A stretch of DNA of 64,000 nt from Dimorphilus gyrociliatus (Eukaryota; Animalia; Annelida): assembly GCA_904063045.1 (NCBI GenBank), contig CAJFCJ010000009.1, forward strand, positions 1,550,968 through 1,614,967. The letters run 5' to 3'. Positions 3,647-39,130 of this stretch are shown piece after piece. Position 1 is the first letter of the stretch. Every line of letters starts with the position of its first letter. Under the pieces are notes generated by a model. It was not told the origin of the DNA. It searched no databases and was given only the letters and a program-made list of their open reading frames with translations. The position numbers were made by a program, and so were the translations under genes.

Positions 3647-4760
3647 TTAAATTTCGAGGTGGGACAGTTTGTCTATACAATCTTCAGGTTCTGCAGTGTA
3701 AAAAAATAACTGACATAGAGGATCTTTGAAAAAGTACTGTAGATATTTCTGATGTTGAATAGACCATCGTTTATCTTCTAAAAGATCTACTCTTATCTTT
3801 GCGATAAAGTTTGTTAATCGTAATAATCTCGTTTCGTACTTATCCGTATATATTCCTTTCAAGTATCGAATAAAACTGACCAATATTCTATTATATAGTT
3901 CAGCAAAATGAGGCTTTTCTCCTCCGGACACAAGGTGTAGAGAATATAAGAAGACAGCTTCCTCTTTGGAGAGGTTTATCTCCTTGATATCATAATATAA
4001 AGTTGTTAAAACTTGGACAGTTTGGTTATCTAGTACATGTTTCATTCGTTCACATTCAATTTTTAGTATTCTATCATTAAAACCAAAGTAAATATTTTCC
4101 TTGTCCAAATAGAATAAAGGATACATAACATCTAAAATATATAACATATCTGCATTCTTAAAAGAGATACTGATAAGATCTTTAAGCTTTAAATCTGTCA
4201 TTCCTGGTAAACTTCTTGAAAAGATTAATGAATAACGATACCAAATATTGAATAAAGTTTCTAAAAAATGTAAGAATCCTTTACGATCATCCAATTCTAA
4301 ACCAGTTACCTCTAATATATCTGAATATTCGTTAAATGGTATATAAATATTCTCTAGGGATGTTTGTGCGTTTTGAAATTGTAAATCAAAATTATGAATT
4401 TCATCTGACCATACGATATTTGTAAAAATAGTTGTAGCATTAGTGGTTTGTATGAATATATCATCAGCATCTGAATGACTTAGCATGGAATATACAGTAG
4501 ATTTTCGACTTTGTAGCTTTTCTGCGAATTTTAAATTTTCTTCTCTTCGCTTCTTGGTATACGGTCCTATTTTTATTCCTTTTGTTGACATTCCCTCTTT
4601 AACGCATTTATTAAAACGGCAAGCTGAACACTTGAATAAAAAATTATCTGCAGGTGAGCATAGATTTCTCCCCCTTTTGCATTGATATGGAGTACTTCTT
4701 TTAAGAGATCGTCCGTAGAAAACTTTACAGGCTTCGCAGGTGTAAACTCCATAATGAAAC
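3647..4760 (-). CDS. NR terminal cassette C1 (most distal): rest of DBD + hinge + LBD
   Basis: Acceptor ttgtttttag|G at 4760; FHYGVYTCEACKVFYGRS; 1114 nt (3n+1); lacks the first CxxC; AATAAA ~25 nt after the stop. Confidence 0.9.
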
Positions 4761-5156
4761 CTAAAAACAACAATAAACACTAGTTATATTTGAAAAAGAT
4801 GGTCCACAAGTAAATTCGTTTGTGATTATATTATGAAATTTGAAGATTATTATAGAAGAGAACTTTGGATAGAACATACAATCAATCGTCTATATATACA
4901 CATATCTATTTATATATTATATAATTATGCCCATTTAGTTCACTGTTAAACTAAACAATTGTAACAATTCCAAGGTATTATATCAGTTTAAAACATTTTA
5001 ACAATGAATACGATAGTATTTTATAAGACAATTTTTATTAAAGTTTCCGTTAGTGATTACTATTTTAATATTTAAAAAGAAAGAAACAACAAAATTATCA
5101 TTTATAGTTGATTGGCTATCGTAAGTTGTAGTTAAAGAAGAAAACAATGTAACTTT

Positions 5157-6279
5157 TTAGATATTTATATGACAATTATTAAGTTCCGTTACGCAATCAT
5201 CTACGCCTTGTGCATGCATGAATAATCTACAAATACTGTCACTATACATGTAATTTACATATTTTGAATTTTTTATACACCATTTTTTATCAGAATAGAA
5301 TTTTTCTTTCAAAATTGCTAGGGAATTAACAATATCCAAAAGTCTCTTTTGATAATCTCCTCCGTTTGTACTTTGTAAATATCTTATAAAACTTGATGTC
5401 ATTCGTGAATGTGCCTGTTTAAGTTGCGGCTGTTTACTATCAGATACAAGATTCAATGCATAGATAAATAAACTCTCTTCCATTGTAAGTTTTAAATTAT
5501 CCAGTCGTTTGTGTATACTTTCGTGAAGCTCAACATTTTTTTCGTCGCTAAGATAAACCATTTTAGACTTTCCCAAAGTGAATACTTTGTCATTCAAATT
5601 GATAACGAGGCAATCGGTATTCCAATAGATGGCGGTGGTCGCCAACATTAATATGTATAGCAGGTCAGTAGATTTAACCATATGTAGAAGAAAATCTTTC
5701 GTACTCAATTCTGACATTCCTGGTAATTTTCTTGCAAATGCTAAGATTCTTCTATACCAGTAGCCTAATAGTTGTTGTGAAAAATGTGATAGTACTTTAC
5801 GATCGTCTAATTCTAAACCAGTTTCTTCTAAAAAGTCCATAAAGTAATCCTTTGGAATTAATGCAAATTCTTGCGTTTTCAAGGCGTCGAGAAATACTTG
5901 ATCAAAATTTGATATCTCTTGTGACCATACAACGCTCCTTATCTCGGAAAATCCGGTAGTGGCTAATGTTAGGATATCATCAACATCTGAATGCATTAGG
6001 GGATGAGGAACGTTCAATTTGCTTTTTCTCCAAAGTTCAGCTATTACTTTACTATTTTGAATTCGTTTGTGACGGCTATATGGTCCTAATTGCATGGAAT
6101 CTCTCGACATTCCAAGACTCAAGCATTTTTTGTAACGGCATAAGGAACAGGCGAAAGTACAATTCCTCGATGGGGAGCATAAATGTTGTCCTGTTTTACA
6201 CTTGTACTGCAAGTTCCTTTTGGAACTTCTACTGAAGAAGACCTTACATGCTTCGCACGTATACGCTCCGTAATGAATG
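5157..6279 (-). CDS. NR terminal cassette C2
   Basis: Acceptor atcctacgcag|C at 6279; IHYGAYTCEACKVFFSRS; LBD signature FARKLPGMSELSTKD; 1123 nt. Confidence 0.9.
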
Positions 6280-6625
6280 CTGCGTAGGATAAATTAAAAG
6301 ATAATGGGTGTGGTTTAAAAAAAGAAAAATACATAAATCATTAAGTCAACAAATAAGACCAAACTATAGACCTAACCCTAACCCTTTAAATCAAGCCATA
6401 GCCAACAGATAATAGATCATAGAACAAAAAGTTAATATTATTTACCAATTGTAGTTTTATAAGAGAATGGGGTCAAGTTTTTGACCAAAAATTTCACAAA
6501 GTTTATTGATTAAGTTACAACGGCAAAAGATATTGATAGTTTTACATAAAGAAAACGCTGTACTACCCAATTTACGATCAACGATACATTAAAAGTTACA
6601 TTTGTGTGGTATCTCTTATCTAAAT

Positions 6626-10987: not shown

Positions 10988-12107
10988 TCATATTTCTAAA
11001 TTGGCTAAGAGTTCAATACCCTTATCAATTTCTGGTGTTGCCATAAATGCTCTCATCAAAGGTGTTTTGTAAATTGCCTTTAAATACGTTTGGTTCTGTT
11101 TTAACCATGCTTTCTCATGAATATTTTCCTCTTTGAAATAGGTAACAACTGAAATAAGTTCCTGCAATCTGAGATGGTATTGTTTTCCATAAGTTTCTTC
11201 AAGATATCTAGAAAAAGCTAATACGAATCGATCGTAAATATCCCGAAATTGTCGACTAGTCTTGATTGTGCATAGCATATTTATTACAGTGAGAAACATG
11301 GCTTCTTCAAATTTAATATTAGCTTTGGCTAATCTAATACCGCATTCCCTTTGCATTTCTAATATTGGCTCATCACCCAGATTATTAAGATATTCAGTGG
11401 GAAACGTAAATGACTCTTTATCATCTACTTTAAAGACAATTCCTTCGGAAGTGAAATCAGTTTTTGAAGTGACAGCAAGTAAAATAGTAATATCAGTCTT
11501 GTTACTGAGTATAACTTCAGTAAATTCTCTATGAGATAGTTTATCAAGTCCAGGAATCTTTCTGATAATTTTTAACGCTTTTTTATATGAAACATTCATA
11601 ATAGCTTCAATAAATCTTGTATAAAGACCTCTACGATCTATTTCAATACCTGTAATTTCTAATGTATCCATATATTCTGCTTTTGTATAAATTCCTTGTG
11701 AAACAGCATTGGTAGCTTGATGAAACAATTCCCTAAAATTTTCTATTTCAAGATTCCAATCTTTAATGACAAGATCTCCAAAAGATTGATTACAAATTAC
11801 AATAATATCTTGCGAATCAGAGAAATTAAGCAGATATGGCACAATTAACTTGGTTTTTTCAATAATAGCTAAATGTTTCTTATTCCTTTGATGTCTATCT
11901 TTGGTATATCTTCCCATTTTAGTATTACCTTTAGACATTCCTATATCTATGCATTTATTATATCTACAATATTTGCAAATGAATGAATAACTGTCATTCG
12001 GAAAACATGAATATCTTTGAGTAATGCAAACGAATGTTGTATATTTATCCATACTTCTGCGAAAAAAGACTTTACAAGCTTCGCACGTATAAGCTCCATA
12101 GTGGTAG
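10988..12107 (-). CDS. NR terminal cassette C6
   Basis: Acceptor tttatttgcag|C at 12107; YHYGAYTCEACKVFFRRS; 1120 nt. Confidence 0.9.
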
Positions 12108-12355: not shown

Positions 12356-13475
12356 CTATATCTTTAATCCTTTTAAAAGTTCAACACCTACATCAAGATC
12401 GGGTTCCGCAATAAATGCTCTCATAATATTTGTTGTATATATCATTTTTAAGTAATTTTCATTCTTCTTTAACCATTTCTTTCCTTGGTGTATCGACTCT
12501 TTAAAATATGTTGATAGAGAGATCAATTCTTGTAATCTCTCATGATATTTATTTCCATAGTGCTCTTCAAGATAATTAGTAAAAGCTAGCAAAAATCGAT
12601 GTTGAAAATCTTGAAGATGAGGATGTGTTTTTGTTGGACAGAACATTTGTATTGCGGTAAGAAATACTGCTTCGTCAAATGTTAAACCTATATCTGTTAT
12701 TTTTTTCCCAGCGTATGCTTGTTTGTTAGCTATATCGCTGTCTGACATTTTTGCTAGATAGTCAGCTGGTAATATTATTTTATGATTATCATCTAATCGA
12801 AAAGTTACTCCTTCTTGAGACCAATTTACCTGTGAAGCAATCGCCATAAGGACATATATATTCTCCTTGTGACTGAGTACAGTTCTAAAAAAATCTTTAT
12901 CAGGTAATGTATCTAAACCAGGTAGTCGGCGAAGACACTTTAGTGCTCGCGTATACGTGACAACCATGGTAGTTTCAACAAATTTTGAGTAGTTCCGCCT
13001 GTGATCAATCTCAACACCTGTTACTTCTAAAACATCCATATATTGTTCTTTTGAATAAATATTTTGCGATACGGTACCCAATGCTCTTTGAAATAGTTCA
13101 GTAAAATCTTCAACTTCAGCAATCCAGCTTTTAATTGTGAAATTTTCAAAAGATTGATTACATATTATCACAACGTCTTTTGCATCGGAATATTGAAGTA
13201 GATAAGGTATTTTAGATTTCCTCATATTAAAATTAACCAACTGCTTTCTGTTCTCTTCGTGTCTTTCTTTCGAATATCTACCTATTTTAGTTTTACTCTT
13301 GGACATACCTAAGGCAATGCATTTTTTATATCTACATCGTTTGCAAGTGAATGTGTTAAATTTTGTTGGAAAGCAGGAATTCCTCCTAGTATTGCAAACA
13401 TATGTGTTATGTATATCCATACTTCGTCGGAAAAAAACTTTACAGGCTTCGCAGGTGTATGCTCCATAGTGGAAA
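12356..13475 (-). CDS. NR terminal cassette C7
   Basis: Acceptor tttttttgcag|T at 13475; FHYGAYTCEACKVFFRRS; 1120 nt. Confidence 0.9.
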
Positions 13476-13659: not shown

Positions 13660-14785
13660 TCAATCTGTCAAGTTCAACTCTTGTAAAAGGGCTTCTACAT
13701 CATTTGGGGAATGTTTATCAACGATTATTTTTATGTAGTTTGATTTATAGACAGTAGTTAAATATTCTCTCTCTTCTTTTATCCATTTATTGGAATATAG
13801 ACTTTGAAGTTTTACAATGCTAAAAAGGTTCATAAGTTCTCTTAACCTTAAATAGTATTTACTACCGTATTGATTTTCAAGATATCTATAAAATGCAATG
13901 ATAAGCATTTCGTATATTTCTTTCACACCTGGAGTTATTGCATTAGGAGTAAAGACATTGAGAGTAGTTAGAAAAAGATTTTCCTCAAACGTAAGATTTG
14001 CTTCAATAACAGCATCAAGAGGTGCTTCAATAGAGTCAACAACCTTAGGAGTTGATAGATTAACTAATTCATTTTTTTTTATATATAAAGTATGATTATC
14101 ATCAAGCTTAAATATGAACGAATGATTGTTCTTAGAGATATTTAAAATAGCTGTCCAAATAAAGCCTACATTAGATGAATTTTTAAGGAGATTTAAAATA
14201 AATTTGGAGTTTATCAGCTTTTCTGTTCCCGGTATTTTTCTTAGTGATGATAAGAAATGTTTGAAATTTACATTCATAACCTTTTCAAAGAACTCAGTGA
14301 ACACTCTACGAGTGTCTACCTCCACACCTGTGGTCTTTAAAATATCCATGTATGTATCTTTATTAAAAATTCCATCGTCCATAGTTTGGCTAGCATTTAA
14401 AAATTTCTTGTGAAATCCTTCTATCTCATTAGCCCAATAAACTGAAGGTGTATTGGAAAATGCAGCCAGACAAACTGTGATAATATCGTCAGCTTTGGAA
14501 TGCCTTAAAAGATGTGGAATATCTAGCTCTCTCTTATTATTTTGTTTCACTTTATCTTTATTCACTCTGTGCGTTTCGTTACTATATCTTCCCTTTTTAA
14601 TGTTGTCTTTAGACATTCCAACAGATAAACACCTATTATATCTACACAGCCTACAAGCAAACGAACAATTTTCCATAGGAAAGCAAAGCTTTCTCTTAGT
14701 AATGCATTCAAACTGCTTGTACTTTTCGATACTTCTACGAAAGAAAACTTTACAGGCTTCGCAGGTGTAAGCGCCATAATGGTAA
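13660..14785 (-). CDS. NR terminal cassette C8
   Basis: Acceptor ttttttccag|T at 14785; YHYGAYTCEACKVFFRRS; 1126 nt. Confidence 0.9.
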
Positions 14786-15055: not shown

Positions 15056-16175
15056 TCATATCTTAAGTTCTTTTAGTAGAGTATTAGCTTGTTCTAGAGG
15101 TAGGTTTTTCGTAAATATTTTCATAATTTTAGACCTATAGACTGTATTCAAATACTCTTCATTATCTCGTAACCATTTTTGTCCAGTTCTAGCATGAAGT
15201 TTTAAGGAACTCATTAAATTCACTAGTTCAATTAATCTTATATGATATTTCGTTCCATACTGACTTTCAAGATATCTTGTAAAAGCGAGAATAAATCTTT
15301 GATGCATATGTATCAAATGACGCCTTTCCCTTTTAGGGTATAGCAAATTGAGAGATACCAAGAATGTTGTCTCTTCAAACGTTAAATTTGTTTTTTCTAT
15401 TAGACGGCTGCATTCTTGGTGAACAGCTGTCATTCCAGGATCACACATATTTATGAATTGCTGCTTGGTCATCTCTAATATGTGTTCGTCGTCTAATTTC
15501 ATAAGTAATGAATCATTGACCCATTTGTTACCTTGTGAAATCGCAATAGGCAATTGCACATCTTCCTTATTTTCCAAGATTGTCAGAACAAACTCGATTG
15601 CAGATAGTTCATCCAATCCTGGAAGATTTCTTACAGAAGAGGCAAAGCGAGCGAAAGTTGATTTCATTATTTTTTCGCAAAATTCTCCAAAAACACGTCT
15701 ACTATCGACTTCTACTCCTGTGACTTTATAAATATCCATATATTCATCTTTACTGAAGAATCCTCGTTCGGTTACTGCTTTAACGCGTTGAAATTCGCGG
15801 TCAAATTCTTCAATTTCACTATGCCAATTAATATTCAGAAAATGGGAAAAAGAGCAATTACAAGCCATGATAATATCTTGGGAATCTGAATGCTTTACTA
15901 AAAATGGGATTGTAAGTTTGTTTTTCTCTAAGACCTCAAGTTTGTATTTATTCTGTTTATGCCTTTCTCTAGAATATCGACCTATTTTAATGTTATCTTT
16001 TGACATTCCTATTTCCAAACACTTGTTATATCTGCAAAGTTTGCAGACAAATAAGTGATCTTCAGTAGGGAAACATTGATTTCTCCTTGTAATGCAAACG
16101 TATGTTTGGAATTTGTCAGAACTTCTACGGAAGAAAACTTTACAAGCTTCGCAGGTGTATGCCCCGTAATGGAAG
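15056..16175 (-). CDS. NR terminal cassette C9
   Basis: Acceptor ttttttgcag|C at 16175; FHYGAYTCEACKVFFRRS; 1120 nt. Confidence 0.9.
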
Positions 16176-18209: not shown

Positions 18210-19338
18210 TCACAGTTTTAGGCTTTTCATTTCTCCAACAAGTGATGTTGCTTTAATATGATGCGAAAGTAAATTATAGAAGAGGGGAGATTTACAAAAT
18301 GTCATAAAATAATTTTTTGATTTTGACAGGAGAAAACCTTTACGATTGTTGAATACTCGCTCTTTATAGGTACTTAGAGTTGATATAATTTGAGCCAGCC
18401 TTATATGATACCTACTACCGTATTTATTCTCAAGATATCTGGTAAAAGCTAATGTGAATCTTTCATATATACCGTGAAGTTGTGGATATTTAGTTGTGGG
18501 TTTAAGAAAATTAAGAGTAGTGATAAAAATTGCTTCCTCAAATGTTATATGTAACTGCGACAGTATCTCTATTGTTTCTTTTTGACTATCTAGTAGGTTT
18601 ACATCTACTATTTGTGCTAAGCTCGACTTAGGTATATTAAGAGTAAGGTTATCATCAAATGGAATGGCCAAGGAATCATTTTTCCAGAGTGATAGCGAGA
18701 AACTAGCCATAATCAAGTTTACGTCTTCTAGGGACTCTAGAGCTTTTGAAAAAAAATCTTCAGGCTGTAGTTCTTTGGCAATAGGCAAATTTATCAACGC
18801 TTCTGAAAATCCGTTAAATACAGTTGTTATTATCATTTCAAATAATTCAGCGAATACGCGTCTATTGTCTATTTCTACTCCAACTGTTTCGTATATGTCC
18901 ATAAATTGCTCAGAATTATAAAGATGATCATCAAATACTTCATTAACCCTTAAGACTTTTTCCCTAAGGCCGTCAACTTTCGTGGTCCAGTCTTTAATTG
19001 GAAATAAAGAAAAACAATTTTGACATAAAACTACAATATCTTGTGAATCGCTACCAATTGGAAGATAAGGTATATTTATGGATTTGTTTTTTAGGTCTTT
19101 TAGAGTTTTCCTATTCTTTTCATGCCTCTCTAACGAATATCGTCCAATTTTTATGCTATCTTTGGACATTCCAATCTCAACACATTTATCAAATCTACAC
19201 TTTTTACAAGCAAACCTAAAGTTTTCACCCGGAAAACATAAATTCTTCTTAGTTACGCAAACGTAGTTTGAGGGCCTTGTCAGACTTCTTCGATAGAATA
19301 TTTTGCAAGCTTCACAAGTATTTGCCCCATAATGAAAG
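18210..19338 (-). CDS. NR terminal cassette C11 (P-box CEACKI)
   Basis: Acceptor gtttttttccag|C at 19338; FHYGANTCEACKIFYRRS; 1129 nt; only 100 bp from the C12 stop. Confidence 0.9.
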
Positions 19339-19440: not shown

Positions 19441-20569
19441 TTATGAATTAATTATTTCACAAGACTTTAACATATTGAGACATTTATCATAATCCGCTTC
19501 AAATAGTACGTCTTTAACTAATTTAGTACGATAGAATGATTTAATATAATCCATATGTTCAATAATGTTTTTAACTCCATGAAAGAGTTGCACTTTAGTA
19601 TAACTTACAAAGTCAATTATTTCAAATAATCTTTTATGATAGTTTTTACCGTGTACAGATTGAAGATAGCGTGTAAATGCCAAAGTAAATCTTTCGTATT
19701 GTCTTTTAAAATGTGGATTTTCAACAGTTGGTTTTAGAGCGTTAAGGGCAACTATGAATGCTGTTTCTTCAAATGTCATATTTATATTTTGAGCACGAGA
19801 ACTAATCTTTTCTTGACATTGTACTAGTGATTCATCTGAAAAGTTAACGATATCTTCTCTAGAAACCTCTAAAGAATGATCAGCGTCAAGATTTATGATT
19901 ACTCTGTTATCTTTCCATAGAGCCCCTCCTGAGCAGGCTATTATAAAATGAATTTCATCTTTCTGAGCAATGACTACTCTACAAAATTCATCAAAATCAA
20001 GATCGTGCAAAGCGGGTAAACTTCTCAAGCCTTGTACAAAACGAGTTAGAACAGTTTCATGAACTTGTTCCATGAATTGCATAAAAACACGTCTTCCATC
20101 AATATCAGTTCCTGTTACCTTATAAATATCCATAAAATCATTTCTTGGAAAACTACCTGATTCTAAACTCTGCACTGCCTGCTTAAATTTTTGTTCAAAG
20201 CCTTCCATTTCATTATGCCAACATATATTTAAAAAAAATGATAAAGAGTCTCTACATTTGATAATAACATCTTGCGAATCCGTATAATTTACTAAATACG
20301 GAACTGTTTGTTGTTTTCTACTTCTCTCAACCAACATTAATCGATTCTCAGCATGTCTTTCTTTAGAATATCTCCCCATTTTTATAGACGTTTTAGACAT
20401 TCCCACCTCTAAACATCTAGCATATCTGCAATATTTACAAACGAACGTAAAATGATTCGTAGGATTGCATTGTTGCCTCTTATTAATACAATAGAAACCA
20501 CTGGACTTTCCGCAACTTCTCCGAAAGAATACTTTACAAGCTTCGCATGTATACGCTCCATAGTGGAAG
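19441..20569 (-). CDS. NR terminal cassette C12
   Basis: Acceptor attttttacag|C at 20569; FHYGAYTCEACKVFFRRS; 1129 nt. Confidence 0.9.
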
Positions 20570-23767: not shown

Positions 23768-24914
23768 TTAAACCTCCACTGAAACGCGTTTCATTTTGCA
23801 TGACAGCAAACTAACAGTTGAAGAAAAATCTTCGAAATTGTGTTCGGTCCAGAACTTTGAAAAGCAACCACCATTATCAATTTGATTGACATAGTCTAGA
23901 TTCTTTGTCACCCATTTGCGAAAAAATAGCGATGTTCTCTTAAAAAGTGCTACAAAGTTTACAATGCTTAATAATCTTCTGGGATAAGAATTACCATAGG
24001 TACTTTCAAGATACCTGGTAAATGCTATTAGGTAACGATTATAATATAATCGTAAATTTTCGTTTCCCTTGATTGGATTGAGGAGACTAATTATAAGTAG
24101 GAAAATTGATTCTTCAATAGTAAAATTAAGATTTTGAATTGATTGAAGGACGGTTTCTTCGGAAATGACAAAATTAGCGTCTGTTAAATTCTTGAAATCA
24201 TCTTTTTTAAGGGTTAAAACGTAACCATCGCCTAAATTGCACGAGAGACCATCTTCAGTCCATATTAATTTGCTAGTTGAGCTGTTAAATATTTGAATAT
24301 CATCTTTATGGGAAATAAGAAGGTGAAAAAACTTCTCGTCGCTTAGTTCTTTTAATCCCGGTATTTTACTAACTGCATTAATGAAACGTGTTGATGATAT
24401 TTCCATAACACTATTTAATATGCTCATAAACGACTTTCTATAGTCGATTTCAAGACCAGATACTTGAAATATCTCCATGTAATCGTTCTTTGGAAATATT
24501 CCATCCTCACAAACGGCAGACGCGTTTCTGAATTTTGTTTGAAAATCAGATATTTCTTTACTCCAATCAATCTTAACTGCATCATGAAATATATTCATAC
24601 ATTGTATGATTAGATCTTGGGAATCCGTATGATTGATTAGATATGGTACCGTTTTTTTACTATTTTCAATTCTTGTTAATAAGATTTTGTTTCTATTATG
24701 TATTCGCTTAGTGTATCGTCCAGTCCTTATGGCATGTCGAGACATTCCAATATCTAGGCATTTTTTAAATCTACAAGCCCTGCATTGAAACCGAAAATCG
24801 GGTGCTGGTGTGCAGACTTTACGTTTTGTAACACATTCATAATCTATCGAACTCTTCAATGATCGTCTAAAGAAGACTTTACAGGCTTCACAAGTATAAC
24901 ATCCGTAATGAAAG
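23768..24914 (-). CDS. NR terminal cassette C15
   Basis: Acceptor ttattttacag|C at 24914; FHYGCYTCEACKVFFRRS; 1147 nt. Confidence 0.9.
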
Positions 24915-29967: not shown

Positions 29968-31081
29968 TTAAGAGTTCAAGATTTGTTTATATATTTTGAC
30001 ACATTCATTTTCATCATTCAGTACCCAGATTTTGCTAACACGGTGGATATTTTTTAGAAGCTGTAGATTTTGCGAAACCCATTTACGGCCATAGTGATAT
30101 TGTTCCTTATACAGTGATAATAAATTCATTAGTTTTAATAATCTTTTATGAGACGAAACTCCAAATATATTATCCAAATATCCTTGAAAAGCGACGAGAA
30201 ACCGATTTTGTAATACACGAAATTGTGGACACCGACTATTCGGAGTCAGTATGTATAAACCTAATAAGAAAACCGATTCTTCATATGTTATGTCGACTTC
30301 TGCTAAAGTATCACAATACTTTTTAGTCAAATCAGCAAGACTAGAATCACATAAATTTTCATAATCTTCTCTTCTTAATGTTAACGAATGATCTTTATCT
30401 AAGTGATATTCTACAGTATCATCTACCCATTTAAGTCTTCCTGTGAGTGTTAGAAAGAAACGAACGTCGTCTAGGTGGTTGTGTATATTCAAAAAAAATG
30501 TTCTATCATCAAGATCCTCAAAACCAGGAAAACTTCTTAAAGTTGAAAGAAATTTTTTCATTCCTTTTTGAATTATAATATCCATCAAGTCAAGAAATTG
30601 TTTTCTGTTATCTATTTCTACGCCTGTTACATTCATAATATTATAAAACTCATCTTTCGCATAAAACCCCTGCTCAAATATTCCCGATACAGTTGCGAAT
30701 AATTCCTCGAAATTATCTATCTCTTTTCGAAGGTCTAAATCCAGGAATGGAGAGAAAACATTTGTGCAGCGTATGAAAATATCTTGAAAATTTGAATTCT
30801 TTGGCAGTAGGGGAATAACTTCTTGTTTCTCTTTCGAATTCAGAAGGTTTAAAGCATTTTGCTTAAGTCTTTCATTACTATATCTTCCCATTTTAATTGC
30901 TTTTTTAGACATTCCTACCTCAATACATTTTGAAAATCTACAAGATTTGCATAAGAATGCATGATTTTCCAATGGAACACAAAGGCCCTTATTAGTTAAA
31001 CAAGTATAGGGTGTAAGCTTTTGTAACGATCTTCTGAAGAAAACTTTACAAGCTTCGCAGGTATAGACGCCATAGTGTAAG
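29968..31081 (-). CDS. NR terminal cassette C19 (young subfamily)
   Basis: Acceptor ctgtgtttcag|C at 31081; LHYGVYTCEACKVFFRRS; 1114 nt. Confidence 0.9.
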
Positions 31082-31464: not shown

Positions 31465-32578
31465 TTAAGAGTTCAATATCTGTTTATATAACTTGATACA
31501 TTCATTTTCATCATTCAATACCCAGATTTTAGTGACACGGTTGATATTTTTTAGAAGATGTAGATTTTGCAAAATCCATTTACGGCCATAGTGATATTGT
31601 TCCTTAAAGAGTGATAATAAATTCATCAGTTGTAATAATCTTTTATGGGACCGAACTCCATATGTGTTATCTAAATATCCTTGAAAAGCGACGAGAAACC
31701 GATTTTGTAATACACGAAATTGTGGACACCGACTATTCGGAGTCAGTATGTATAAACCTAATATGAAAATTGATTCTTCATATGTTATGTCGACTTCTGC
31801 TAAAGTATCACAATACTTTTTAGTCAAATCAGCAAGACTAGAATCACATAAATTTTCAAAATCTTCTCTTCTTAATGTTAACGAATGATCTTTATCTAAG
31901 TGATATTCTACAGTATCATCTACCCATTTAAGTCTTCCTGTGAGTGTTAGAAAGAAACGAACGTCGTCTAGGTGGTTGTGTATATTCAAAAAAAATGTTC
32001 TATCATCAAGATCCTCAAAACCGGGAAAACTTCTTAAACTTGAAAGAAATTTTTTCATTCCTTTTTGAATCATAATATCCATCAAGTCAAGAAATTGTTT
32101 TCTGTTATCTATTTCTACGCCTGTTACATTCATAATATTATAAAACTCATCTTTCGCATAAAATCCTTGTTTAAATGTTGCTGATACAGTTGCGAATAAT
32201 TCCTCGAAATTATCTATCTCTTTTCTAAGGTTTAAATCAAAGAATGGAGAAAATACATTTGTGCAGCGTATGAAAATATCTTGAAAATTTGAATTCTTTG
32301 GCAGGAAAGGAATAACTTCTTGTTTTTCTTTCAAATTTACAAGACTTGCAGCATTTTGCTTAAGTCTTTCATTACTATATCTTCCCATTTTAATTGCTTT
32401 TTGAGACATTCCTACCTCAATACATTTTGAAAATCTACAAGATTTGCATAAGAATGCATGATTTTCCAATGGAACACAGAGGCCCTTATTAGTTATACAA
32501 GGATAGGGTGTGAGCATTTTTTTTGATCTTCTGAAGAAAACTTTACAAGCTTCACAGGTATAGACGCCATAGTGTAAG
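31465..32578 (-). CDS. NR terminal cassette C20 (young subfamily)
   Basis: Acceptor ttgtgtttcag|C at 32578; LHYGVYTCEACKVFFRRS; 1114 nt. Confidence 0.9.
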
Positions 32579-33056: not shown

Positions 33057-34179
33057 TTATTTCTTTAAGTTTAAGCTTTTAATCATTTTAATACTATCGT
33101 CAATATTTCTTTCAATAAAAAAATCTGTTGAAAATTTTGAAGGAAATTTTTTACAATATTCAATATTTTGTTCAGTCCATTTTTTGGTATGTAATAGCCT
33201 CTCTTGTAGGACACTGTCAAGATTGACTATCTCGGCTAATCTCCTTTCGTACTTGCGACCATAAGAATTTTCTAGATAATTGGTAAAAGCCATCAACATT
33301 CTATTATATATTTCATGAAATTGTGGAAAGGTTCGATTCGGTTTAATGACGTTTAAAGTAATTATTATACAAATTTCATGAAAGCTTAGATTTACATTAG
33401 AAGTTCGGCGTAGCAGTTCTTCTTCACCAGCTAATAAAGTTTCATCGCATAAATTAGCAATGTCTAATCTTTGCATCTCAAGTACATATTTATCGCTGAA
33501 TTCAATACTATAAGAACGTTCACTTAAAGTTACACCTCCGAAAAGTAAAGTAGCATAATTTATTGCATCTTTTGACATTGCTAAAGCTAATAGAAGTTCC
33601 TCCTGTTTTAGATCACGCAAACCTGGTAGTAACATTATTCCCTCAAAAAATCGAGTAACTGCATGCTTTACTAACTGTTCTGTAAAAGTACTAAACACTC
33701 TTCGATTATCGAGCTCTACACCAGTGGCCTCGTAAACGTCCATATAGTCTTCTTTTGAAAATGTTCCTGTTTGGCAAAATGATCTGATTTGTTTGAATAT
33801 CTCATCAAAATTTTGAATTTCTTTTTCCCATTCGATTTTATTGAAGGTTGAAAATGATTTGCAACAGCAAACAATAAGATCTTGCGCGTCTGAATGTTTT
33901 GGCAGAAACGGAATAATTACGTGTTTCCTATCTAATTCCTCAACTAAACATTGATTTTGTCTACGTTTCTGAACAGTATATCTCCCTAATTTTATCGACG
34001 ATTTAGACATTCCAACTCTTAAACATCTATCATATCTACAAGATTGACAAAAAAATCTGAACTCTTTAGTTGGTAAGCATTGCCTCTTTTTTCTCACACA
34101 TTTATAATTTTCAAATTTTGACCAACTCCTACGGAAGAAAACTTTACAAGCCTCGCATGTGTTTGCTCCATAATGATAG
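33057..34179 (-). CDS. NR terminal cassette C21
   Basis: Acceptor attgtttcag|C at 34179; YHYGANTCEACKVFFRRS; 1123 nt. Confidence 0.9.
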
Positions 34180-34395
34180 CTGAAACAATAATATGGCCTG
34201 CATTTGTTTGTTTTAACTTGTTTTTGTTTTCATAAAGATTCTTTTATTTCAATTACTATATTCAAAAACGGAATATTTAGACATTTATAACACCATGACT
34301 TGAAAAAGCGCGGCAAAATGAAGCAGAAAACAATGCAAGCAGACTAGGGAACGATTCAAATAAAATCATAATGCATTATTGAACAAATATAGTAC

Positions 34396-35506
34396 TTAAA
34401 CTAATTGCAGCTGATCAATTTTATCAATACATGCTTCTAGATCTGCTACTCCCCAAAGGCACAAAAGGAGCTCGCTACTATACATATATTTCAAATAAGC
34501 TGTATTTTCTTGCCAATATTTAGATATTAGCTTTTCTTGTTCATTCAAATATGCTAAACTATTTGCAATGTTCAATAAGCGTGTATGGAAATTTTCTCCG
34601 TAGGTGCTATGCAAATATCTATGAAAACTAAGAAAAAGTCTATTATTTGCTTCTTTTAGAAATAAGAATTTCTTATTTGGAGTTGTTAAGTTTATAGCTA
34701 GAATAAGCATGACTTCTTCGGGTGAAAAATTAATTTCTGACAAACGTGTAAAACAGTCGCTTTGAATCTCAATGACATTTTTACCAGATAAGTTTTCAAA
34801 ATCTCTTTTTGAATATTTTATCGTTTTATCTTTGTAAGTAAACTGTGTGTCATGAGAGAAGAATCGGCTCATACCGATATTGAATGCTAGTGTCACTAAA
34901 TATTTATTCTGAAAGAAAATCTGTAAAAAATCTCTTTTTGATAATTTATTTAACCCAGGAAATGTGCTTGTAACTTTCAAAAGTTTTGTCAGAGAAACTT
35001 CCATAAATTTCTCAGCTAATTGCAACATAAATTTCCTACCATCTATTTCAACCCCTGCAACAGTTAATACATCCACATATTGGTCATAAGAAAACGTTCC
35101 CTTGTGATTATGATACAAAGCTGCATCAAATAACGTTTGAAACCCTTGAATTTCAGAATTCCAGTCAATTTGTTTTAGATCAGTATAAGCATTCACACAC
35201 CTAACTATAATATCATCTGAATCGCAAAACTGAGGTAGTAAAAGCGGCTGATTGCTAAGTTTGTTTAACTTCATTTTATTATACATCTTTCTTTCTTTTG
35301 TGTATCGACCTATTTTTACAGAAGTTTTAGACATGCCTATTGCCCTGCATCTATGGAGTCTACATTTTTTGCATGCAAATATAAAATCACTTCTAGCGAT
35401 GCATTGACCCCTTTTGTTCACACATGCATATTTGGATGTATCATCATTATGTCTCCTCCGAAAAAATACTTTGCAAGCTTCGCACGTGTATGCTCCATAG
35501 TGGAAA
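34396..35506 (-). CDS. NR terminal cassette C22
   Basis: Acceptor tattttccag|T at 35506; FHYGAYTCEACKVFFRRR; 1111 nt. Confidence 0.9.
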
Positions 35507-35700
35507 CTGGAAAATAATGAATCTAAATTGCAATGAAAGATCTTTTCAAATATAAACTATATATATATATATATATTAGTATATATATTGCTTTGTTGCA
35601 CTTATACTTTTTTCTCAAATTTTGATTGAAGTTTATTGATTAATTGAACACGTTGATAAATATAAAGACTACAACTTCTCTATTTTTCTTCATTATCAAT

Positions 35701-36820
35701 TCAAAACAGTTCAAGATTTTCTAATTTTTTTATATTTTCTTCTAAGTTACCAACTTGCCATAGACATTTAAATATGTGACGATCGTAAACATAATCAAGA
35801 TATTTAACATTCTCTTTCCAATACTTTTGTATTATACTTGATTGTTCATTAAAATAAGCTAGTGAGTTAACTATAGTAAGTAGACGATTGTGATGTTTCG
35901 ATTCGTACTTATTCTTAAAATACCTATCCATAGTTAATAGTATACGATTATTTGCAGCAGATAAATGGGGAAATCTTTTTTGTGGTCTAGTAAGGTTGAG
36001 TGCAATTAAAAGCACTAATTCTTCGGTAGTTAAATTAAGTTTTGTTAATTGCCTATGACATTGTTCCTGTATCTCAACTATCTTTTTATCGCTGAGATTT
36101 ACAATATCACTTTTATTTACTTTCAAACAGCTCTCATCTAATTTCAATTCATATTTATCTGCCTGCCAACTTTGTATCATTATAAAACTGATAGCTATAT
36201 GAACTATGTTTGAATTCAAAAAGAAATTCATCAGGAAGTTCTCTCTTGATAATTCCTTCATACCTGGAAATTGCTGAGTGTTTGCTAATAATCTTTTAAC
36301 GGCTACTTCTAAGAATTTCTCTGATAAATTTGATATGTGCTTTCTACCGTCAACTTCAACGCCTGTTACTTCAAGAACGTCCATAAATGTGTCTTTGGAG
36401 AATGTACCACACTTAGTCTCATTCATGGCAGTATTAAGTTTAAATTGAAAATCTGCTATTTCCTTATTCCAACTAATACTTTGAATATTATTGAAAATAG
36501 TAGAACATTCTACTAATAAATCATCGCAATCCGTAAAATTCATCAAATATGGTACTTTCGATTGTTTATATTCGATCGTATCTAACTGTGCTTTATTTGA
36601 AAGTTTTCTCTTGTTGGTATACCGTCCTATCTTTATATTACATCTTGCCATACCGACTTCCACACATTTATTATATCTACATTGTGAACAATTGAATAGA
36701 AATTTATCTGATGGAAAACATTGATTTCTGCCGTTCAGACAAAGTATTTCTGTTTTTCTATTCTTAATACGACGAAAAAATACGTTGCAGGCTCCACAAG
36801 TATAAGCTCCATAGTGAAAA
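35701..36820 (-). CDS. NR terminal cassette C23 (atypical P-box CGACNV)
   Basis: Acceptor cctcttcttag|T at 36820; FHYGAYTCGACNVFFRRI; 1120 nt. Confidence 0.88.
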
Positions 36821-37093
36821 CTAAGAAGAGGAAAGACGATATATTCTTTAAAAATATTCAGATATTTTAGATATATATGTATTAAAAATTTGTACTCATA
36901 ACAATGTCATATATATATTATTTGCATAATAAACAATTCCATTCTTATGTTGAACTATAAATCTATTTTAAAAAACGATAGATATTAATATAAAAAAATA
37001 TGACTCATTGGAATTTTTGTCTAAATACACGTTTAGCTATGTCGAAATATGTGCCATATGTTTCACAAGAGAACAAATTGAACAATTCTTGTA

Positions 37094-38225
37094 TTACGAA
37101 ATTTTCAATGTCATTAATGAATTGATAAGGGAGGTTGCATTTGATTCAAGCCATAAAACTTTGGACAAATCATCGTCAAATAAATAATTATAATAATCAT
37201 ACTCTTCTTTCCTACAGTTTTTCCTTTCAATTAAACCCTGTTCTCTCATATTTGATATGAATTTTACTATTTGAAATAATCGTTTATGATAAAATTTTCC
37301 GTGCCTACTCTCCAAATAGCGTGTGAGAGCAGACATTATATGATTATGAATAGCTTTAAGATGTGGATATTTTTTTCTAGGTGTACATAAAGTAGCAGCA
37401 AATAATAAAACTGTTTCTTCATAATTTAATACTATTTCGTCGAGATCGTTGTGGAAATGCTCCTGATTGTGAACGGTATTTTCACCTGATAAATTATACA
37501 ATTGGGCCTTGTGTATAGCCAACTCGTACTCTCCAAATTTCATTACAGAGTAATCATCTTTAAAATAATGAGTACTTGATAGATTTAATACAAGCGATAG
37601 ATCGTCGGGCATTCTTAATATATTCATAAAAAAATCTCGTTTGTCTAATTCTAACATACCGGGTAGTTTAATGACTATATTTAGTAAACGGTGAAAGCTT
37701 GTTCTAAGTACTTTCTCCCCTAGTGAAATCATACATTTCCTACTGTCCATTTCAACTCCTGTTGTTTGCAAAATGTCGTTGAAAGCCTCCCTGTGTATCA
37801 TATTGTGTGAAAAGATATTTGAGATTTTATTAATATCATCTCTTAAGCCCTTAATTTCTTTTGGCCAATCAATATTCATCATATCGGAAAACAATACTGA
37901 AAATGTGACAATTGTATCATCAACCTCGGTATAATTAAACAGATAAGGGACTAAGAGCTTTTTTTGGTTAATATCGTTAGCTATCTTATCATTTTCCAGG
38001 CGCTTCTCCACGCTATATCTACCGATTTTGGCAGCTTTTTTACACATTCCTATACTAATACATTTATTATATTTACAAGATTTACAGGTAAATTTGTAAT
38101 CTGTAGAAGGATTGCATAAACCTCTTCCAGTTTGACATTTCACTAGAGATGATTTCCTATCAGACTTCAATGCTCGATAGAAAAAGGTTTTGCAAGGGTG
38201 ACAAGTATTTGCTCCATAATGATAG
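37094..38225 (-). CDS. NR terminal cassette C24 (most proximal; atypical P-box CHPCKT)
   Basis: Acceptor atttaaacag|C at 38225; YHYGANTCHPCKTFFYRA; 1132 nt. Confidence 0.88.
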
Positions 38226-38909
38226 CTGTTTAAATTGAAATTTGTCTAGAATTAAGATCAATAGGGTAATTCCAAATGACGTATGAATATATTATTCTCA
38301 TTTCTATTTATATACACATTACCAAGTAAACTGGTTCAATAACCTGAACCTGGTAATTTGTATAATGGACCTATTAACTACCTTTTACAAAAGAAAGAAA
38401 ATTTGTGTTGTTGGCACAAACTACTAAACAGCGGTGATAATTTCCAATCTTATTTATCACATTAAATATAGATAGTTACTTTATCAGAATGAATAGCTGG
38501 CTGTTATCAATGATATTTTAGGATAACTAGTATTGATTAAATTTTCTTTACAATAAAATTATTTTCATATTTTTGGGTTAAATATCAAAACATATTTTTT
38601 ACATATATATTTACGAACAGCCGACAGTCATAACAATATAAATTAATTAAATAAAATGTTAACGACTTGCGTGAATGATAATTTAAAGAAAACGAGAAAT
38701 ATTCTATTTTGTCTATAAGACTTAAAGATGGCGGTTTTTACTGTGGAATACTTTCTTTTACAATTAAGATTGTCTCGACAACAAAGCTTTATAAAACACT
38801 AACAATCGCAAATCGATTTAACCTCTCGTTGGAGGTAAGAATATATACAGGACTAACAAAACGAATATCACCCACAAAAATCAATTGTGTACACGAATAC
38901 ATAAAGTGT

Positions 38910-38917
38910 ACATACCC
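38910..38917 (-). other. Phase-2 5' splice site GG|GTATGT of the shared NR exon
   Basis: The minus strand reads TCT GG|GTATGTAC. Its phase complements the 1-nt overhang of all 24 cassettes. Confidence 0.85.
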
Positions 38918-39130
38918 AGATGATGGACCTCCACAAACTTGGCATGGAGGTAGAGTTGTTTTTTGTTGCTCCGTAGCTTCTTCAAATGAGTCCAATTGCT
39001 TGACAAGACTATCTTCTATAGATATTATAGTAGAAGAGGGTGAATCACTTTCGCCTTCAAGCAGAGCCAATAGATCATTTAGATCATTATCGCTGCTACT
39101 ATCTTGCGGGCTTGGGTTTGTTGAAGCCAT
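38916..39130 (-). CDS. Shared first coding exon of the NR locus: acidic A/B region + first half of zinc finger 1
   Basis: ATG at 39130. 71 codons + GG (215 nt): MASTNPSPQDSSSDNDLNDLLALLEGESD...TTLPPCQVCGGPSS-G. Followed by the donor GTATGT at 38915. It is the only CxxC-G exon I found upstream of any cassette. Confidence 0.9.

What the first reader, a model, noticed from the sequence alone, without database searches (positions are those of the whole stretch)
3647..39130. One nuclear-receptor gene with a constant first exon and 24 alternative DBD+LBD terminal exons (lola/mod(mdg4)-type architecture)
Seen: 24 same-strand ~1.1 kb cassettes each encode an NR from HYG onward, all lack the first two zinc ligands, and none has a conserved in-frame ATG. 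One upstream exon supplies exactly the missing CQVCGGPSSG and ends in a donor. Established: a constant 5' exon with many mutually exclusive 3' exons is known for Drosophila BTB-zinc-finger genes (lola, mod(mdg4), broad, fruitless). NR isoforms normally vary the N-terminal A/B region and keep the DBD/LBD constant. Inference: one promoter and one exon yield up to 24 receptors of ~440 aa, each with its own P-box, D-box and ligand pocket, chosen by long-range alternative splicing/polyadenylation or trans-splicing. I know of no NR locus described this way, but I could not search the literature.
Basis: partly seen in the sequence, partly recalled or inferred. Interest (0 to 1): 0.97.

Follow-up and report, generated by a model that had tools for sequence, protein, structure and literature searches.

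The report
One receptor gene, 24 alternative bodies
In the tiny marine worm Dimorphilus gyrociliatus, one short first exon is spliced to any of 24 tandem end-exons that each encode the rest of a hormone-type (nuclear) receptor, so one promoter can yield up to 24 receptors, a layout I found no paper describing for this protein family.

Summary
The window is Dimorphilus gyrociliatus scaffold CAJFCJ010000009.1.

- **Layout.** There are 24 intact minus-strand cassettes of 369-381 codons. Each starts at a polypyrimidine-AG acceptor in the same codon phase inside zinc finger 1. Only one exon (39130-38916) supplies the Met, the first Cys pair and a donor.
- **Control.** A regex that finds own first exons for 5 of 6 cassettes in a paralogous array of the same genome finds only that one exon here.
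- **RNA.** Contigs from two independent runs join exon 1 exactly to C22, C21, C24 or C21, and C14 (15.6 kb away). Exon-1 depth is 5-9 times that of any cassette contig, while a DNA run is flat.
- **Selection.** Ka/Ks is 0.17-0.39. A related species has the same single exon 1 followed by at least 12 cassettes, with nine supported cassette matches, all in the same order.
- **Protein.** An AlphaFold model of one cassette (C9) shows a partial DBD plus an NR1-like ligand-binding fold.
- **Limits.** Junctions were seen for only 3-4 of 24 cassettes, cis versus trans splicing is not settled, and 18 of 24 cassettes share one P-box, so diversity lies mainly in the D-box, hinge and LBD.
- **Context.** The official annotation misses the architecture. 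Earlier unchecked scan notes report similar arrays on other scaffolds of this genome.

The parts
39193..39215 (-). Conserved motif at the probable transcription start (CAGTAGGTGTTGGCAGGTATACA); the RNA contig's 5' end is at 39194
   Evidence: In run X2 the exon-1 contig ends at 39194 followed by Illumina adapter; in X1 the contig reaches 39185. The motif is conserved with the related species' locus L006.
38916..39194 (-). Constant exon 1: 64-nt 5' UTR plus CDS 39130-38916. It encodes 71 codons plus GG of a split Gly: an acidic N-terminus with overlapping LxxLL motifs (LNDLLALL, 39082-39059) and the first Cys pair of zinc finger 1 (CQVCGGPSSG). Donor GG|GTATGT.
   Evidence: Searches show it is the only such exon in the window. 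RNA depth is 1374 and it is joined to cassettes. The ortholog P0004 is 68% identical.
38226..38915 (-). Intron 1 (minimal form, when exon 1 is spliced to C24); for distal cassettes the intron extends up to 34 kb
   Evidence: An X2 contig at depth 58 covers it as unspliced RNA.
37094..38225 (-). Cassette C24 (terminal exon, 376 codons; atypical P-box CHPCKT; no AATAAA/ATTAAA in its spacer)
   Evidence: An X2 contig starts at 38226 and runs through C23 to 35608. The exon-1 junction contig matches C24 or C21.
35701..36820 (-). Cassette C23 (372 codons; atypical P-box CGACNV)
   Evidence: It is covered by RNA contigs, but no exon-1 junction was recovered.
34396..35506 (-). Cassette C22 (369 codons)
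   Evidence: An X2 contig covering 34151-35507 continues with 17 nt that equal the end of exon 1, giving an exact junction. Its ortholog is R1.
33057..34179 (-). Cassette C21 (373 codons)
   Evidence: An X2 contig ending at 34180 continues with 11 nt of exon 1, giving an exact junction. Its ortholog is R2.
31465..32578 (-). Cassette C20 (370 codons; part of the young group C16-C20)
   Evidence: 91% identical to C19. Ka/Ks 0.28.
29968..31081 (-). Cassette C19
28471..29581 (-). Cassette C18
26708..27821 (-). Cassette C17
25055..26168 (-). Cassette C16
   Evidence: The C16-C20 group is co-orthologous to the single cassette R3.
23768..24914 (-). Cassette C15 (381 codons)
   Evidence: Its ortholog is R4.
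22199..23321 (-). Cassette C14 (373 codons)
   Evidence: The X1 metatranscriptome contig is 274 nt of exon 1 plus 121 nt of cassette. Its 30-nt loose-end consensus matches 23246-23275 with 1 mismatch. Its ortholog is R6.
20829..21939 (-). Cassette C13
   Evidence: Its ortholog is R7.
19441..20569 (-). Cassette C12
   Evidence: Its ortholog is R9. The spacer to C11 is only 102 bp.
18210..19338 (-). Cassette C11
16454..17573 (-). Cassette C10
   Evidence: Its ortholog is R10.
15056..16175 (-). Cassette C9 (the one modelled)
   Evidence: The AF2 model has pLDDT 84.6. It matches full-length NRs and NR1 LBDs. Its orthologs are R12 and E2.
13660..14785 (-). Cassette C8
   Evidence: zf-C4 profile positions 13-70.
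12356..13475 (-). Cassette C7
   Evidence: Ka/Ks 0.17-0.25 against C5 and C6.
10988..12107 (-). Cassette C6
9401..10520 (-). Cassette C5
7961..9080 (-). Cassette C4
6626..7751 (-). Cassette C3
5157..6279 (-). Cassette C2
3647..4760 (-). Cassette C1, the last cassette. AATAAA lies 25 nt after the stop, and a convergent SOCS-box gene follows at 2163-3464 (+).

Best explanation
The region is one transcription unit of Dimorphilus gyrociliatus. Transcription starts near 39194. A single 279-nt first exon encodes a conserved acidic N-terminus with LxxLL motifs and the first Cys-X2-Cys of zinc finger 1. That exon is spliced in cis, from one donor (after 38916), to one of 24 alternative terminal exons spread over 35 kb. 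Each terminal exon carries the rest of finger 1 (including the P-box), finger 2, a T/A-box extension, a hinge, a complete NR1-like ligand-binding domain, a stop codon and, in most cases, a poly(A) signal. The products would be about 441-453 aa long, sharing residues 1-72 and differing in everything else. Shown here: the anatomy, the absence of other first exons, exon-1 junctions to at least three cassettes (C14, C21, C22) and possibly C24, purifying selection, and deep conservation of the layout. Inferred: that all 24 cassettes are used, that the joining is in cis on a long primary transcript, and that the choice is made by competition between acceptor use coupled to polyadenylation and continued transcription. 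The array probably arose from a two-exon ancestral gene (still present as the singleton DgyrCDS6098) by repeated tandem duplication of exon 2 alone.
For: Anatomy: 24 intact cassettes have in-phase polyPy-AG acceptors. There is only one Met...CxxC...GG|GT exon. The spacers are 102-649 bp.

Positive control: in the paralogous array L010 of the same genome, the same regex finds an own first exon about 100 nt upstream of 5 of 6 cassettes. It finds only one in the window and one in the orthologous locus L006.

RNA (verified): X2 contigs for C22 and C21 end at the acceptor and continue with 17 and 11 nt that are identical to the end of exon 1. The exon-1 contig carries a 14-nt tail equal to the start of C24 or C21. 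X1 is an independent metatranscriptome about 97% identical to the window; its contig joins exon 1 to C14. Depth is 1374 for exon 1, 157-282 for cassette contigs and 58-68 for the intron, while the DNA control run X3 stays at about 200-340. The intron and spacers are covered contiguously in X2, as expected for a long precursor.

Function: Ka/Ks is 0.17-0.39. All 24 ORFs are intact at a median identity of 33%, whereas the related species shows two decayed cassettes. The AF2 model has pLDDT 84.6 and matches intact NRs and VDR/ROR/LXR LBDs at TM 0.65-0.75. By profile search the DBD is closest to RAR, Rev-erb and ROR.

Conservation: the exon-1 ortholog is 68% identical and is followed by at least 12 cassettes. 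Nine strongly supported matches to window cassettes lie in the same order (eight one-to-one, and R3 against the whole C16-C20 group), at 41-51% identity. The TSS motif is also conserved.
Against: Junctions were recovered for only 3-4 of 24 cassettes, from short-read contigs with 11-42 nt on the shorter side. Only the one read-laying run covered 33300-39299. No junction to C23 was recovered, and one X2 contig runs unbroken from the C24 acceptor through C23. C23 may therefore be mostly 3' UTR in that sample. The library type of X2 is not on record; it is inferred to be RNA from junctions, an adapter-capped 5' end and the depth contrast. Four cassettes (C4, C5, C7, C21, C24 in part) lack a canonical AATAAA/ATTAAA in their spacer, and in this 70% A+T DNA the hexamers found elsewhere are close to chance expectation. 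Two X2 contigs join 24 nt of the exon-1 end to cassettes that are not in the window. This is unexplained under a strictly local cis model unless a paralogous exon 1 has the same 3' end. No protein evidence exists.
Confidence: 0.78

Rival explanations
1. Trans-splicing, as in mod(mdg4) and partly in lola. Exon 1 would be made as a short donor RNA and joined in trans to cassette RNAs that are transcribed independently, possibly including cassettes at other loci.
For: Two X2 contigs (records 12 and 13) join the last 24 nt of an exon-1-like sequence to cassettes. Their bodies are absent from the window and from loci L009 and L010. The body of record 12 matches a separate DNA contig of run X3.
Against: All 24 cassettes lie downstream of exon 1 on the same strand, so cis splicing suffices. 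Intron 1 and the spacers are covered by RNA contigs. The spacers, some as short as 102 bp, leave little room for promoters. The genome paper reports no spliced leaders or operons in this species (PMC7854359), although that concerns SL trans-splicing only. Earlier scan notes report other arrays with their own first exon, and one of these could share the same 24-nt end.
Confidence: 0.1
2. An ordinary tandem family of separate receptor genes. Each cassette would have its own promoter and be translated from an internal or upstream ATG, as the official annotation implies with truncated 270-318 aa models. The exon-1 junctions would be minor read-through splicing.
For: The NCBI annotation calls separate truncated or chimeric genes here. 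A few cassettes have an in-frame ATG shortly upstream of the acceptor. In the paralogous array L010 most cassettes really are separate two-exon genes.
Against: Products starting inside or just before the cassette would lack two zinc ligands of finger 1. Yet the HYG...C-X2-C segment, the acceptor and its phase are kept in all 24 cassettes and in the orthologs. No own first exon exists. The X2 contigs for C21 and C22 end at the acceptor joined to exon 1, and exon 1 is 5-9 times deeper than any cassette.
Confidence: 0.07
3. Only a few cassettes are functional alternative exons. The others would be unexpressed relics of duplication.
For: Junctions were seen for only 3-4 cassettes. C23 and C24 have aberrant P-boxes and no ortholog in the related species.
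Against: All 24 frames are open at a median identity of 33%. Ka/Ks is 0.17-0.39, even among the youngest copies. Nine supported ortholog relations are kept collinear across a divergence at which LBDs are only 35-48% identical. True relics in the related species are visibly frameshifted.
Confidence: 0.05

Closest known systems
Drosophila longitudinals lacking (lola)
   Same: Constant 5' exons are spliced to one of about 20 alternative 3' terminal exons arrayed in tandem on the same strand. Each 3' exon encodes the DNA-binding part of a transcription factor and carries its own stop and 3' end.
   Different: lola is a BTB-C2H2 zinc-finger factor known from insects. Its constant part is a whole BTB domain encoded by several exons, and its variable exons encode only zinc fingers. 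Here the constant part is a single exon ending in the middle of a zinc finger. The variable exon carries most of the DBD and a whole ligand-binding domain. The two are analogous, not homologous (own knowledge of lola; no BTB domain was found here).
Drosophila mod(mdg4)
   Same: One common 5' part is joined to about 30 alternative 3' exons that give different C-terminal DNA or chromatin-targeting modules.
   Different: Several mod(mdg4) 3' exons lie on the opposite strand and need trans-splicing. Here all cassettes are on the same strand, downstream of exon 1, so trans-splicing is not required. It is not excluded.
Clustered protocadherins / UGT1A (vertebrates)
   Same: A tandem array of large variable exons combines with a constant part to give many proteins from one locus. 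The arrays grow by duplication of the variable exon alone.
   Different: The layout is a mirror image. There the variable exons come first, each with its own promoter, and the constant exons are 3'. Here one promoter and one 5' exon serve many 3' exons, so the choice must be made by splicing and polyadenylation rather than by promoter choice.
Known nuclear-receptor isoforms (TRalpha1/alpha2, GRalpha/beta, E75A/B/C, EcR, RAR, ROR N-terminal isoforms)
   Same: Alternative exons change receptor properties. E75 isoforms differ in whether finger 1 is present, because an intron splits the DBD.
   Different: Known cases vary the A/B domain or the last helices of the LBD, with 2-4 isoforms. None replaces the P-box-to-C-terminus block, and none has 24 alternatives (own knowledge; full-text searches found no such description).
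Paralogous NR loci in the same genome (L010 on scaffold 15; singleton DgyrCDS6098, L009)
   Same: They belong to the same receptor family. They have the same phase-2 intron after ...SG inside finger 1, the same (T/I)LPPC(Q)xC end of exon 1, and intronless cassettes.
   Different: In L010, 5 of 6 cassettes keep their own short first exon about 100 nt upstream, so they are whole-gene duplicates. The window array has one first exon for 24 cassettes.
Lineage-specific NR expansions (nematode supplementary NRs; mollusc NR1 expansions)
   Same: They involve rapid tandem expansion of divergent orphan receptors with fast-evolving LBDs.
   Different: Those are independent genes with their own promoters and complete DBDs (own knowledge).

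Membership tests
Nuclear receptor superfamily | C4-type double zinc-finger DBD (Pfam PF00105) with C-X2-C-X13-C-X2-C in finger 1 | tested here: met
   The three cassettes scanned (C1, C8, C24) hit zf-C4 at E 1e-10 to 1e-14 over profile positions 13-70. Exon 1 supplies CQVCGGPSSG, and joining gives exactly 13 residues between Cys pairs. The annotated exon1+cassette paralogs cover profile positions 2-70.
Nuclear receptor superfamily | Helical-sandwich ligand-binding domain C-terminal to the DBD | tested here: met
   Pfam PF00104 does not reach threshold for the three cassettes scanned. However, the AF2 model of C9 (pLDDT 84.6) matches full-length PPARg, RXR, HNF4 and GR structures. It also matches the LBDs of VDR, LXR and ROR at target-normalised TM 0.65-0.75.
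NR1 subfamily (RAR/Rev-erb/ROR/VDR-like) | Phylogenetic placement within NR1; T/A-box extension GMS+xx+xxGR | tested here: inconclusive
   The best DBD profile hits are RARb/g, Rev-erb and RORg, with the match running into the C-terminal extension. The best LBD-only fold hits are VDR, LXR, ROR and PPAR. One mollusc relative is named ROR-beta-like. No phylogeny with reference NRs was made.
lola / mod(mdg4)-type gene architecture | One common 5' part spliced to each of many alternative 3' terminal exons | tested here: met
   Junctions from exon 1 to C22, C21, C14 and C24-or-C21 were seen in two runs.
lola / mod(mdg4)-type gene architecture | Each alternative exon ends the ORF and has its own 3'-end signal | tested here: inconclusive
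   All 24 cassettes end in a stop. AATAAA or ATTAAA is present in 19 of 24 spacers, but this is near chance expectation in A+T-rich DNA. C24 lacks one, and its RNA contig runs on to the C23 3' end at about 35608.
lola / mod(mdg4)-type gene architecture | BTB/POZ domain in the constant part (homology to the insect genes) | tested here: not met
   Exon 1 encodes a 61-aa acidic region plus half a zinc knuckle. It has no BTB domain. A phmmer search of 1.84 billion representatives found one clear ortholog, P0004; the two weaker hits were not examined. The resemblance is therefore one of architecture, not of family.
mod(mdg4)-type trans-splicing | 3' exons joined from separate transcripts (opposite strand or other allele) | not testable with these tools
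   All cassettes are on the same strand. Two off-window cassette contigs carrying the end of exon 1 leave the question open.
SL trans-spliced operon | A common short non-coding leader from a separate SL RNA gene on the downstream cistrons | tested here: not met
   The sequence joined to the cassettes is the coding end of the local exon 1, not a leader. The genome paper reports no SL trans-splicing or operons in this species (PMC7854359).

The most novel reading that the evidence does not exclude
The 24-cassette gene, together with the sister arrays reported elsewhere in this genome, is a one-promoter receptor repertoire. In this reading, individual cells or stages pick one or a few ligand-binding bodies by regulated 3'-exon choice. 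That would be a nuclear-receptor counterpart of lola, Dscam or clustered protocadherin diversity. Exon 1 may also act as a shared donor that is trans-spliced to cassettes at other loci, as the two off-window junction contigs hint. Under this reading, a compact 74-Mb genome multiplies its small-molecule sensors without multiplying promoters.
Probability: 0.25. Interest if true: 0.95.

Novelty: new variant of a known kind. Interest (0 to 1): 0.86.

Why it matters
Nuclear receptors are textbook examples of one gene giving one DBD and one LBD, with isoforms confined to the N-terminus or the last helices. Here a single promoter and one 72-residue N-terminal module appear to drive up to 24 different receptors. 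The shared module carries LxxLL motifs and half a zinc finger. The receptors have mostly the same DNA-recognition helix (18 of 24 share one P-box) but ligand-binding domains only about 30% identical to each other. This has several consequences:

- It extends the lola/mod(mdg4) principle beyond insects and beyond BTB factors.
- It shows how a miniature genome can expand a sensor family by duplicating one exon.
- It offers a natural system for asking how 3'-terminal exon choice is made over 35 kb without promoter choice.
- It means receptor counts based on the current annotation of this species are unreliable, because the models are truncated or fused.
- The conservation of cassette order in a relative, at 41-51% identity, argues that individual cassettes have distinct, maintained functions.

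Tried and rejected
- **Own first exons in the spacers.** Strict and relaxed CxxC-plus-donor scans found only the one exon 1, plus two non-NR chance hits (CNFCFERL, CYKCLNIP). The same scan recovered 5 first exons in control locus L010.
- **Dscam-type docking and selector RNA pairing between intron 1 and the regions upstream of the acceptors.** RNAduplex energies were no better than shuffled controls (-58.7 against -60.5 kcal/mol). The best 11-mer complementarity was shared by 16 spacers, against 15-20 in shuffled introns, and no shared 8-mer motif appeared beyond polypyrimidine tracts. Rejected at this crude level.
- **Conserved U1-like donor inside cassettes.** This was prompted by the annotated C15-C14 fusion. 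Only C15 has AGG|TAT at that site, and only 3 strong donor-like sites occur in all cassettes. Rejected.
- **Relics of C23 and C24 in the related species' 2.1-kb intron 1.** None found (best E = 0.019).
- **Exact-protein look-up of a C23 product, to reach RNA contigs.** Not on record.
- **Locating the off-window cassettes of X2 contigs 12 and 13.** They are absent from the window and from the fetched loci checked (L001-L010).
- **Poly(A) hexamers as evidence.** The counts are near chance expectation in this composition, so they were not used as support.
- **Literature.** Six full-text searches and two papers (PMC7854359, PMC10497141) contain no description of this architecture.
- **Word-limited homology searches.** These returned few relatives.

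Full report
**What is in the sequence**

Between 38225 and 3647 the minus strand carries 24 uninterrupted reading frames of 369-381 codons. Each begins in the same way: a polypyrimidine tract, (C/T)AG, one base, then [Y/F/L/I]-H-Y-G-x-x-T-C-E-A-C-K. This is the nuclear-receptor DBD from the middle of zinc finger 1 onward. 4760).

Upstream, at 39130-38916, a single exon encodes MASTNP...TTLPPCQVCGGPSSG and ends GG|GTATGT. The GG plus the first base of any cassette makes a Gly codon, so all 24 joins are in frame. The joined finger has the canonical C-X2-C-X13-C-X2-C spacing.

The three cassettes scanned (C1, C8, C24) match Pfam zf-C4 from profile position 13 to 70. Annotated exon1+cassette paralogs elsewhere in the genome match positions 2-70. 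tblastn and regex scans find no second exon 1 and no further cassette in the 64-kb window. The spacers are 102-649 bp.

One correction applies. Eighteen of 24 cassettes share the P-box CEACKV. The diversity therefore lies in the D-box, hinge and LBD (median pairwise identity 33%), not in 24 different P-boxes.

**Which organism, and what the annotation says**

Profile searches return Dimorphilus gyrociliatus proteins as the closest named relatives. An exact look-up places the window on GCA_904063045.1, scaffold CAJFCJ010000009.1.

The deposited annotation treats the cassettes in two ways. Some are truncated single-exon genes of 270-318 aa starting at an internal Met. Others are chimeric models of 685, 986 and 1013 aa. 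DgyrCDS7639, for example, is C15 fused to C14 without any first Cys pair.

The genome paper never mentions nuclear receptors, and it reports no spliced leaders or operons (PMC7854359). Six full-text searches found no description of a receptor gene of this kind.

**A built-in control**

A paralogous array on scaffold 15 (L010) has six cassettes with the same intron position. In that array, five cassettes have their own Met...C-x2-C...GG|GT first exon about 100 nt upstream. A singleton paralog (DgyrCDS6098, L009) is a plain two-exon gene.

The same regular expression that finds those five exons finds exactly one in the window, and one in the orthologous locus of a related species. The absence of private first exons here is therefore real and not a detection failure.

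**RNA evidence**

I placed it on 33300-39299, which covers exon 1 and C24 to C21. Three runs were laid:
- X2, a 2017 run of the same clone. Its library type is not on record.
- X1, a coral-tank metatranscriptome about 97-98% identical to the window.
- X3, a DNA control.

X2 behaves as RNA. Its exon-1 contig (38916-39194) has depth 1374 and is capped by Illumina adapter at 39194. Intron 1 has depth 58-68 and the cassette contigs 157-282. X3 stays between about 200 and 340 across the stretch.

The junctions, checked base by base:
- The X2 contig for C22 ends at the acceptor and continues with CAGATGATGGACCTCCA. Together with the base at 35507 this reproduces the predicted junction with 18 nt of exon 1.
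- The C21 contig does the same, with 12 nt of exon 1.
- The exon-1 contig carries a 14-nt tail equal to the start of C24 or C21. Their first 18 nt are identical, so the two cannot be told apart.
- In X1, the exon-1 contig (274 nt of exon 1) continues into 121 nt of cassette. Its 30-nt loose-end consensus matches 23246-23275 with one mismatch. This is C14, whose acceptor lies 15.6 kb from the donor.

No leader or other 5' exon is seen on these cassette ends. At least three, and probably four, cassettes are joined to exon 1, including one in the middle of the array.

The limits are these:
- The other 20 cassettes are untested.
- The contigs are short-read assemblies.
- No junction was recovered for C23.
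- One X2 contig runs from the C24 acceptor through C23 to 35608. This suggests that C24 mRNAs, which lack their own AATAAA, end at the C23 site.

**Are the cassettes functional?**

All 24 frames are open despite the 33% median identity. Ka/Ks is 0.23-0.39 among the young copies C16-C20 and 0.17-0.25 among older pairs.

An AlphaFold model of C9, built on the 25-sequence alignment, has mean pLDDT 84.6. It matches full-length receptor structures (PPARg, RXR, HNF4, GR, Nurr1). It also matches isolated LBDs of VDR, LXR, ROR and PPAR at target-normalised TM 0.65-0.75. A profile search of PDB sequences puts the DBD and its C-terminal extension nearest RAR, Rev-erb and ROR. Most cassettes end in an amphipathic LLxxL-type helix. 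These are NR1-like receptors with real ligand-binding folds. Formal subfamily placement was not done.

**Conservation**

A phmmer search of 1.84 billion representatives with the exon-1 peptide found one clear relative. This is P0004, 68% identical, ending in the same TTLPPCQVCGGPSSG plus intron. Two weaker hits were not examined.

Its contigs come from an unidentified related species (Logan assemblies of SRR23372216, SRR23372228, SRR23372229, SRR23372231 and SRR31984834). They show the same conserved upstream block, one exon 1, a 2.1-kb intron and at least 12 cassettes with identical acceptor anatomy.

A maximum-likelihood tree gives nine strongly supported matches, all in the same order along both arrays:
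- R1 = C22
- R2 = C21
- R3 = the C16-C20 group
- R4 = C15
- R6 = C14
- R7 = C13
- R9 = C12
- R10 = C10
- R12 = C9

Identity in these pairs is 41-51% overall and 35-48% in the hinge plus LBD. C16-C20 are a lineage-specific burst. C23 and C24 have no counterpart in the relative.

The relative also carries two visibly frameshifted cassettes, which shows what relaxed selection looks like. A third species (ERR14224705, L001) has the same tandem cassettes. A motif at the mapped 5' end (39215-39193) and a 120-nt upstream block are conserved, while introns and spacers are not alignable.

**Mechanism**

The best-supported reading has three parts:
- One promoter, with a start near 39194.
- One donor, after 38916.
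- Cis splicing to one of 24 terminal exons.

RNA coverage of the intron and spacers fits a long precursor. How the choice is made is unknown. I looked for Dscam-like docking and selector complementarity and for shared motifs upstream of the acceptors, and found nothing above shuffled controls.

By inference, the choice is a competition between use of a given acceptor (with its downstream 3'-end signal) and continued elongation. Depths in X2 show no simple proximal bias: C21 and C22 are deeper than C24/C23.

The constant exon contributes two things. One is a conserved acidic segment with overlapping LxxLL motifs (LNDLLALL). The other is two zinc ligands, so no cassette can make a complete DBD without it.

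**Rivals**

- **Trans-splicing** cannot be excluded. It is hinted at by two X2 contigs that join 24 nt of the exon-1 end to cassettes absent from the window and from L009 and L010. A paralogous array with the same exon-1 end would explain them equally well. Earlier scan notes report other arrays with one first exon on other scaffolds.
- **Independent genes with their own promoters** are contradicted by the junctions, the depth ratio, the missing first exons and the conserved acceptors.
- **Mostly dead copies** is contradicted by the selection and orthology data.

**Comparison with known systems**

The architecture works like Drosophila lola and mod(mdg4): a constant 5' part, and many alternative 3' terminal exons that carry the DNA-binding module. 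It is not a member of that family. There is no BTB domain, the factor class is different, the phylum is different, and the split falls inside a zinc finger.

It is the mirror image of clustered protocadherins and UGT1A. Known receptor isoforms change the A/B domain or the last helices of the LBD. None swaps the whole P-box-to-C-terminus block among two dozen options.

I rate it a new variant of a known kind of gene architecture, applied to a family where it is unexpected. It has direct but still partial RNA support.

Noticed in passing
window 22199-24914; locus L011: The deposited annotation of GCA_904063045.1 breaks this locus in two ways. Some cassettes are truncated single-cassette proteins (270-318 aa, starting at the Met of the GMS motif). 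Others are chimeric multi-cassette models of 685, 986 and 1013 aa. DgyrCDS7639 fuses C15 to C14 through an AGG|TAT donor inside the C15 LBD and lacks the first Cys pair. Nuclear-receptor counts for this species taken from the annotation will be wrong.
   Followed up: partly
run X2, contig records 12 and 13 (laid at 35456-35507 / 38916-38939): Two roughly 1.28-kb RNA contigs join 24 nt identical or near-identical to the end of exon 1 to cassettes whose bodies are not in the window or in L009/L010. The body of record 12 matches a separate 10.7-kb DNA contig of run X3. Either a paralogous array has the same exon-1 end, or exon 1 is trans-spliced.
   Followed up: partly
window 35608-38226: One RNA contig runs unbroken from the C24 acceptor through C24, the spacer and C23. 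It ends about 25 nt after the AATAAA that follows C23. C24 has no AATAAA or ATTAAA of its own, so C24 mRNAs may carry the whole of C23 as 3' UTR. No exon-1 junction to C23 was recovered.
   Followed up: no
window 39401-39520 and 39560-39700: Two blocks upstream of exon 1 are about 80-95% identical to the related species, while introns and spacers are not alignable. The distal block looks like the first coding exon of a divergently transcribed neighbour (ATG near 39629 on the + strand). The proximal 120-nt block is non-coding and contains ACATCCGGAA (ETS-like). It could be a shared bidirectional promoter.
   Followed up: partly
L010:10184-20288 (D. gyrociliatus scaffold CAJFCJ010000015.1): This paralogous array has six cassettes. 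Five have their own short first exon about 100 nt upstream. The cassette at 13618 has none and may share the exon at 12045 with its neighbour, an intermediate two-cassette state. The annotation fuses pairs of these into 808-aa and 789-aa 'two-DBD' models.
   Followed up: partly
L006:15012-16465 and L006:20196-20963: The related species' array contains two decayed cassettes with frameshifts, stops and lost Cys residues. The first sits where an ortholog of C11 would be expected.
   Followed up: partly
window 39059-39082 (-): Exon 1 encodes two overlapping LxxLL motifs (LNDLLALL), conserved in the ortholog (LDDLLALL). A receptor-box motif in the shared N-terminus could let every isoform dock on another receptor's coactivator groove.
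   Followed up: no
window 25055-32578: C16-C20 are 74-91% identical and correspond to a single cassette (R3) in the related species. This is a recent local burst, and even the 55 nt upstream of the acceptors are near-identical.
   Followed up: partly
window 55500-64000 (-): Long open frames rich in CxxC and furin/EGF-like cysteine repeats (GC 36-39%, against about 30% elsewhere) lie upstream of the receptor gene. They look like part of a large cysteine-rich surface-protein gene, of the kind other scan notes describe just outside the window.
   Followed up: no
window 2163-3464 (+): An intronless 433-aa ORF with a C-terminal SOCS box (Pfam E 8.5e-06) and a predicted beta-propeller-like body is convergent with the last cassette and marks the distal end of the array.
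   Followed up: partly
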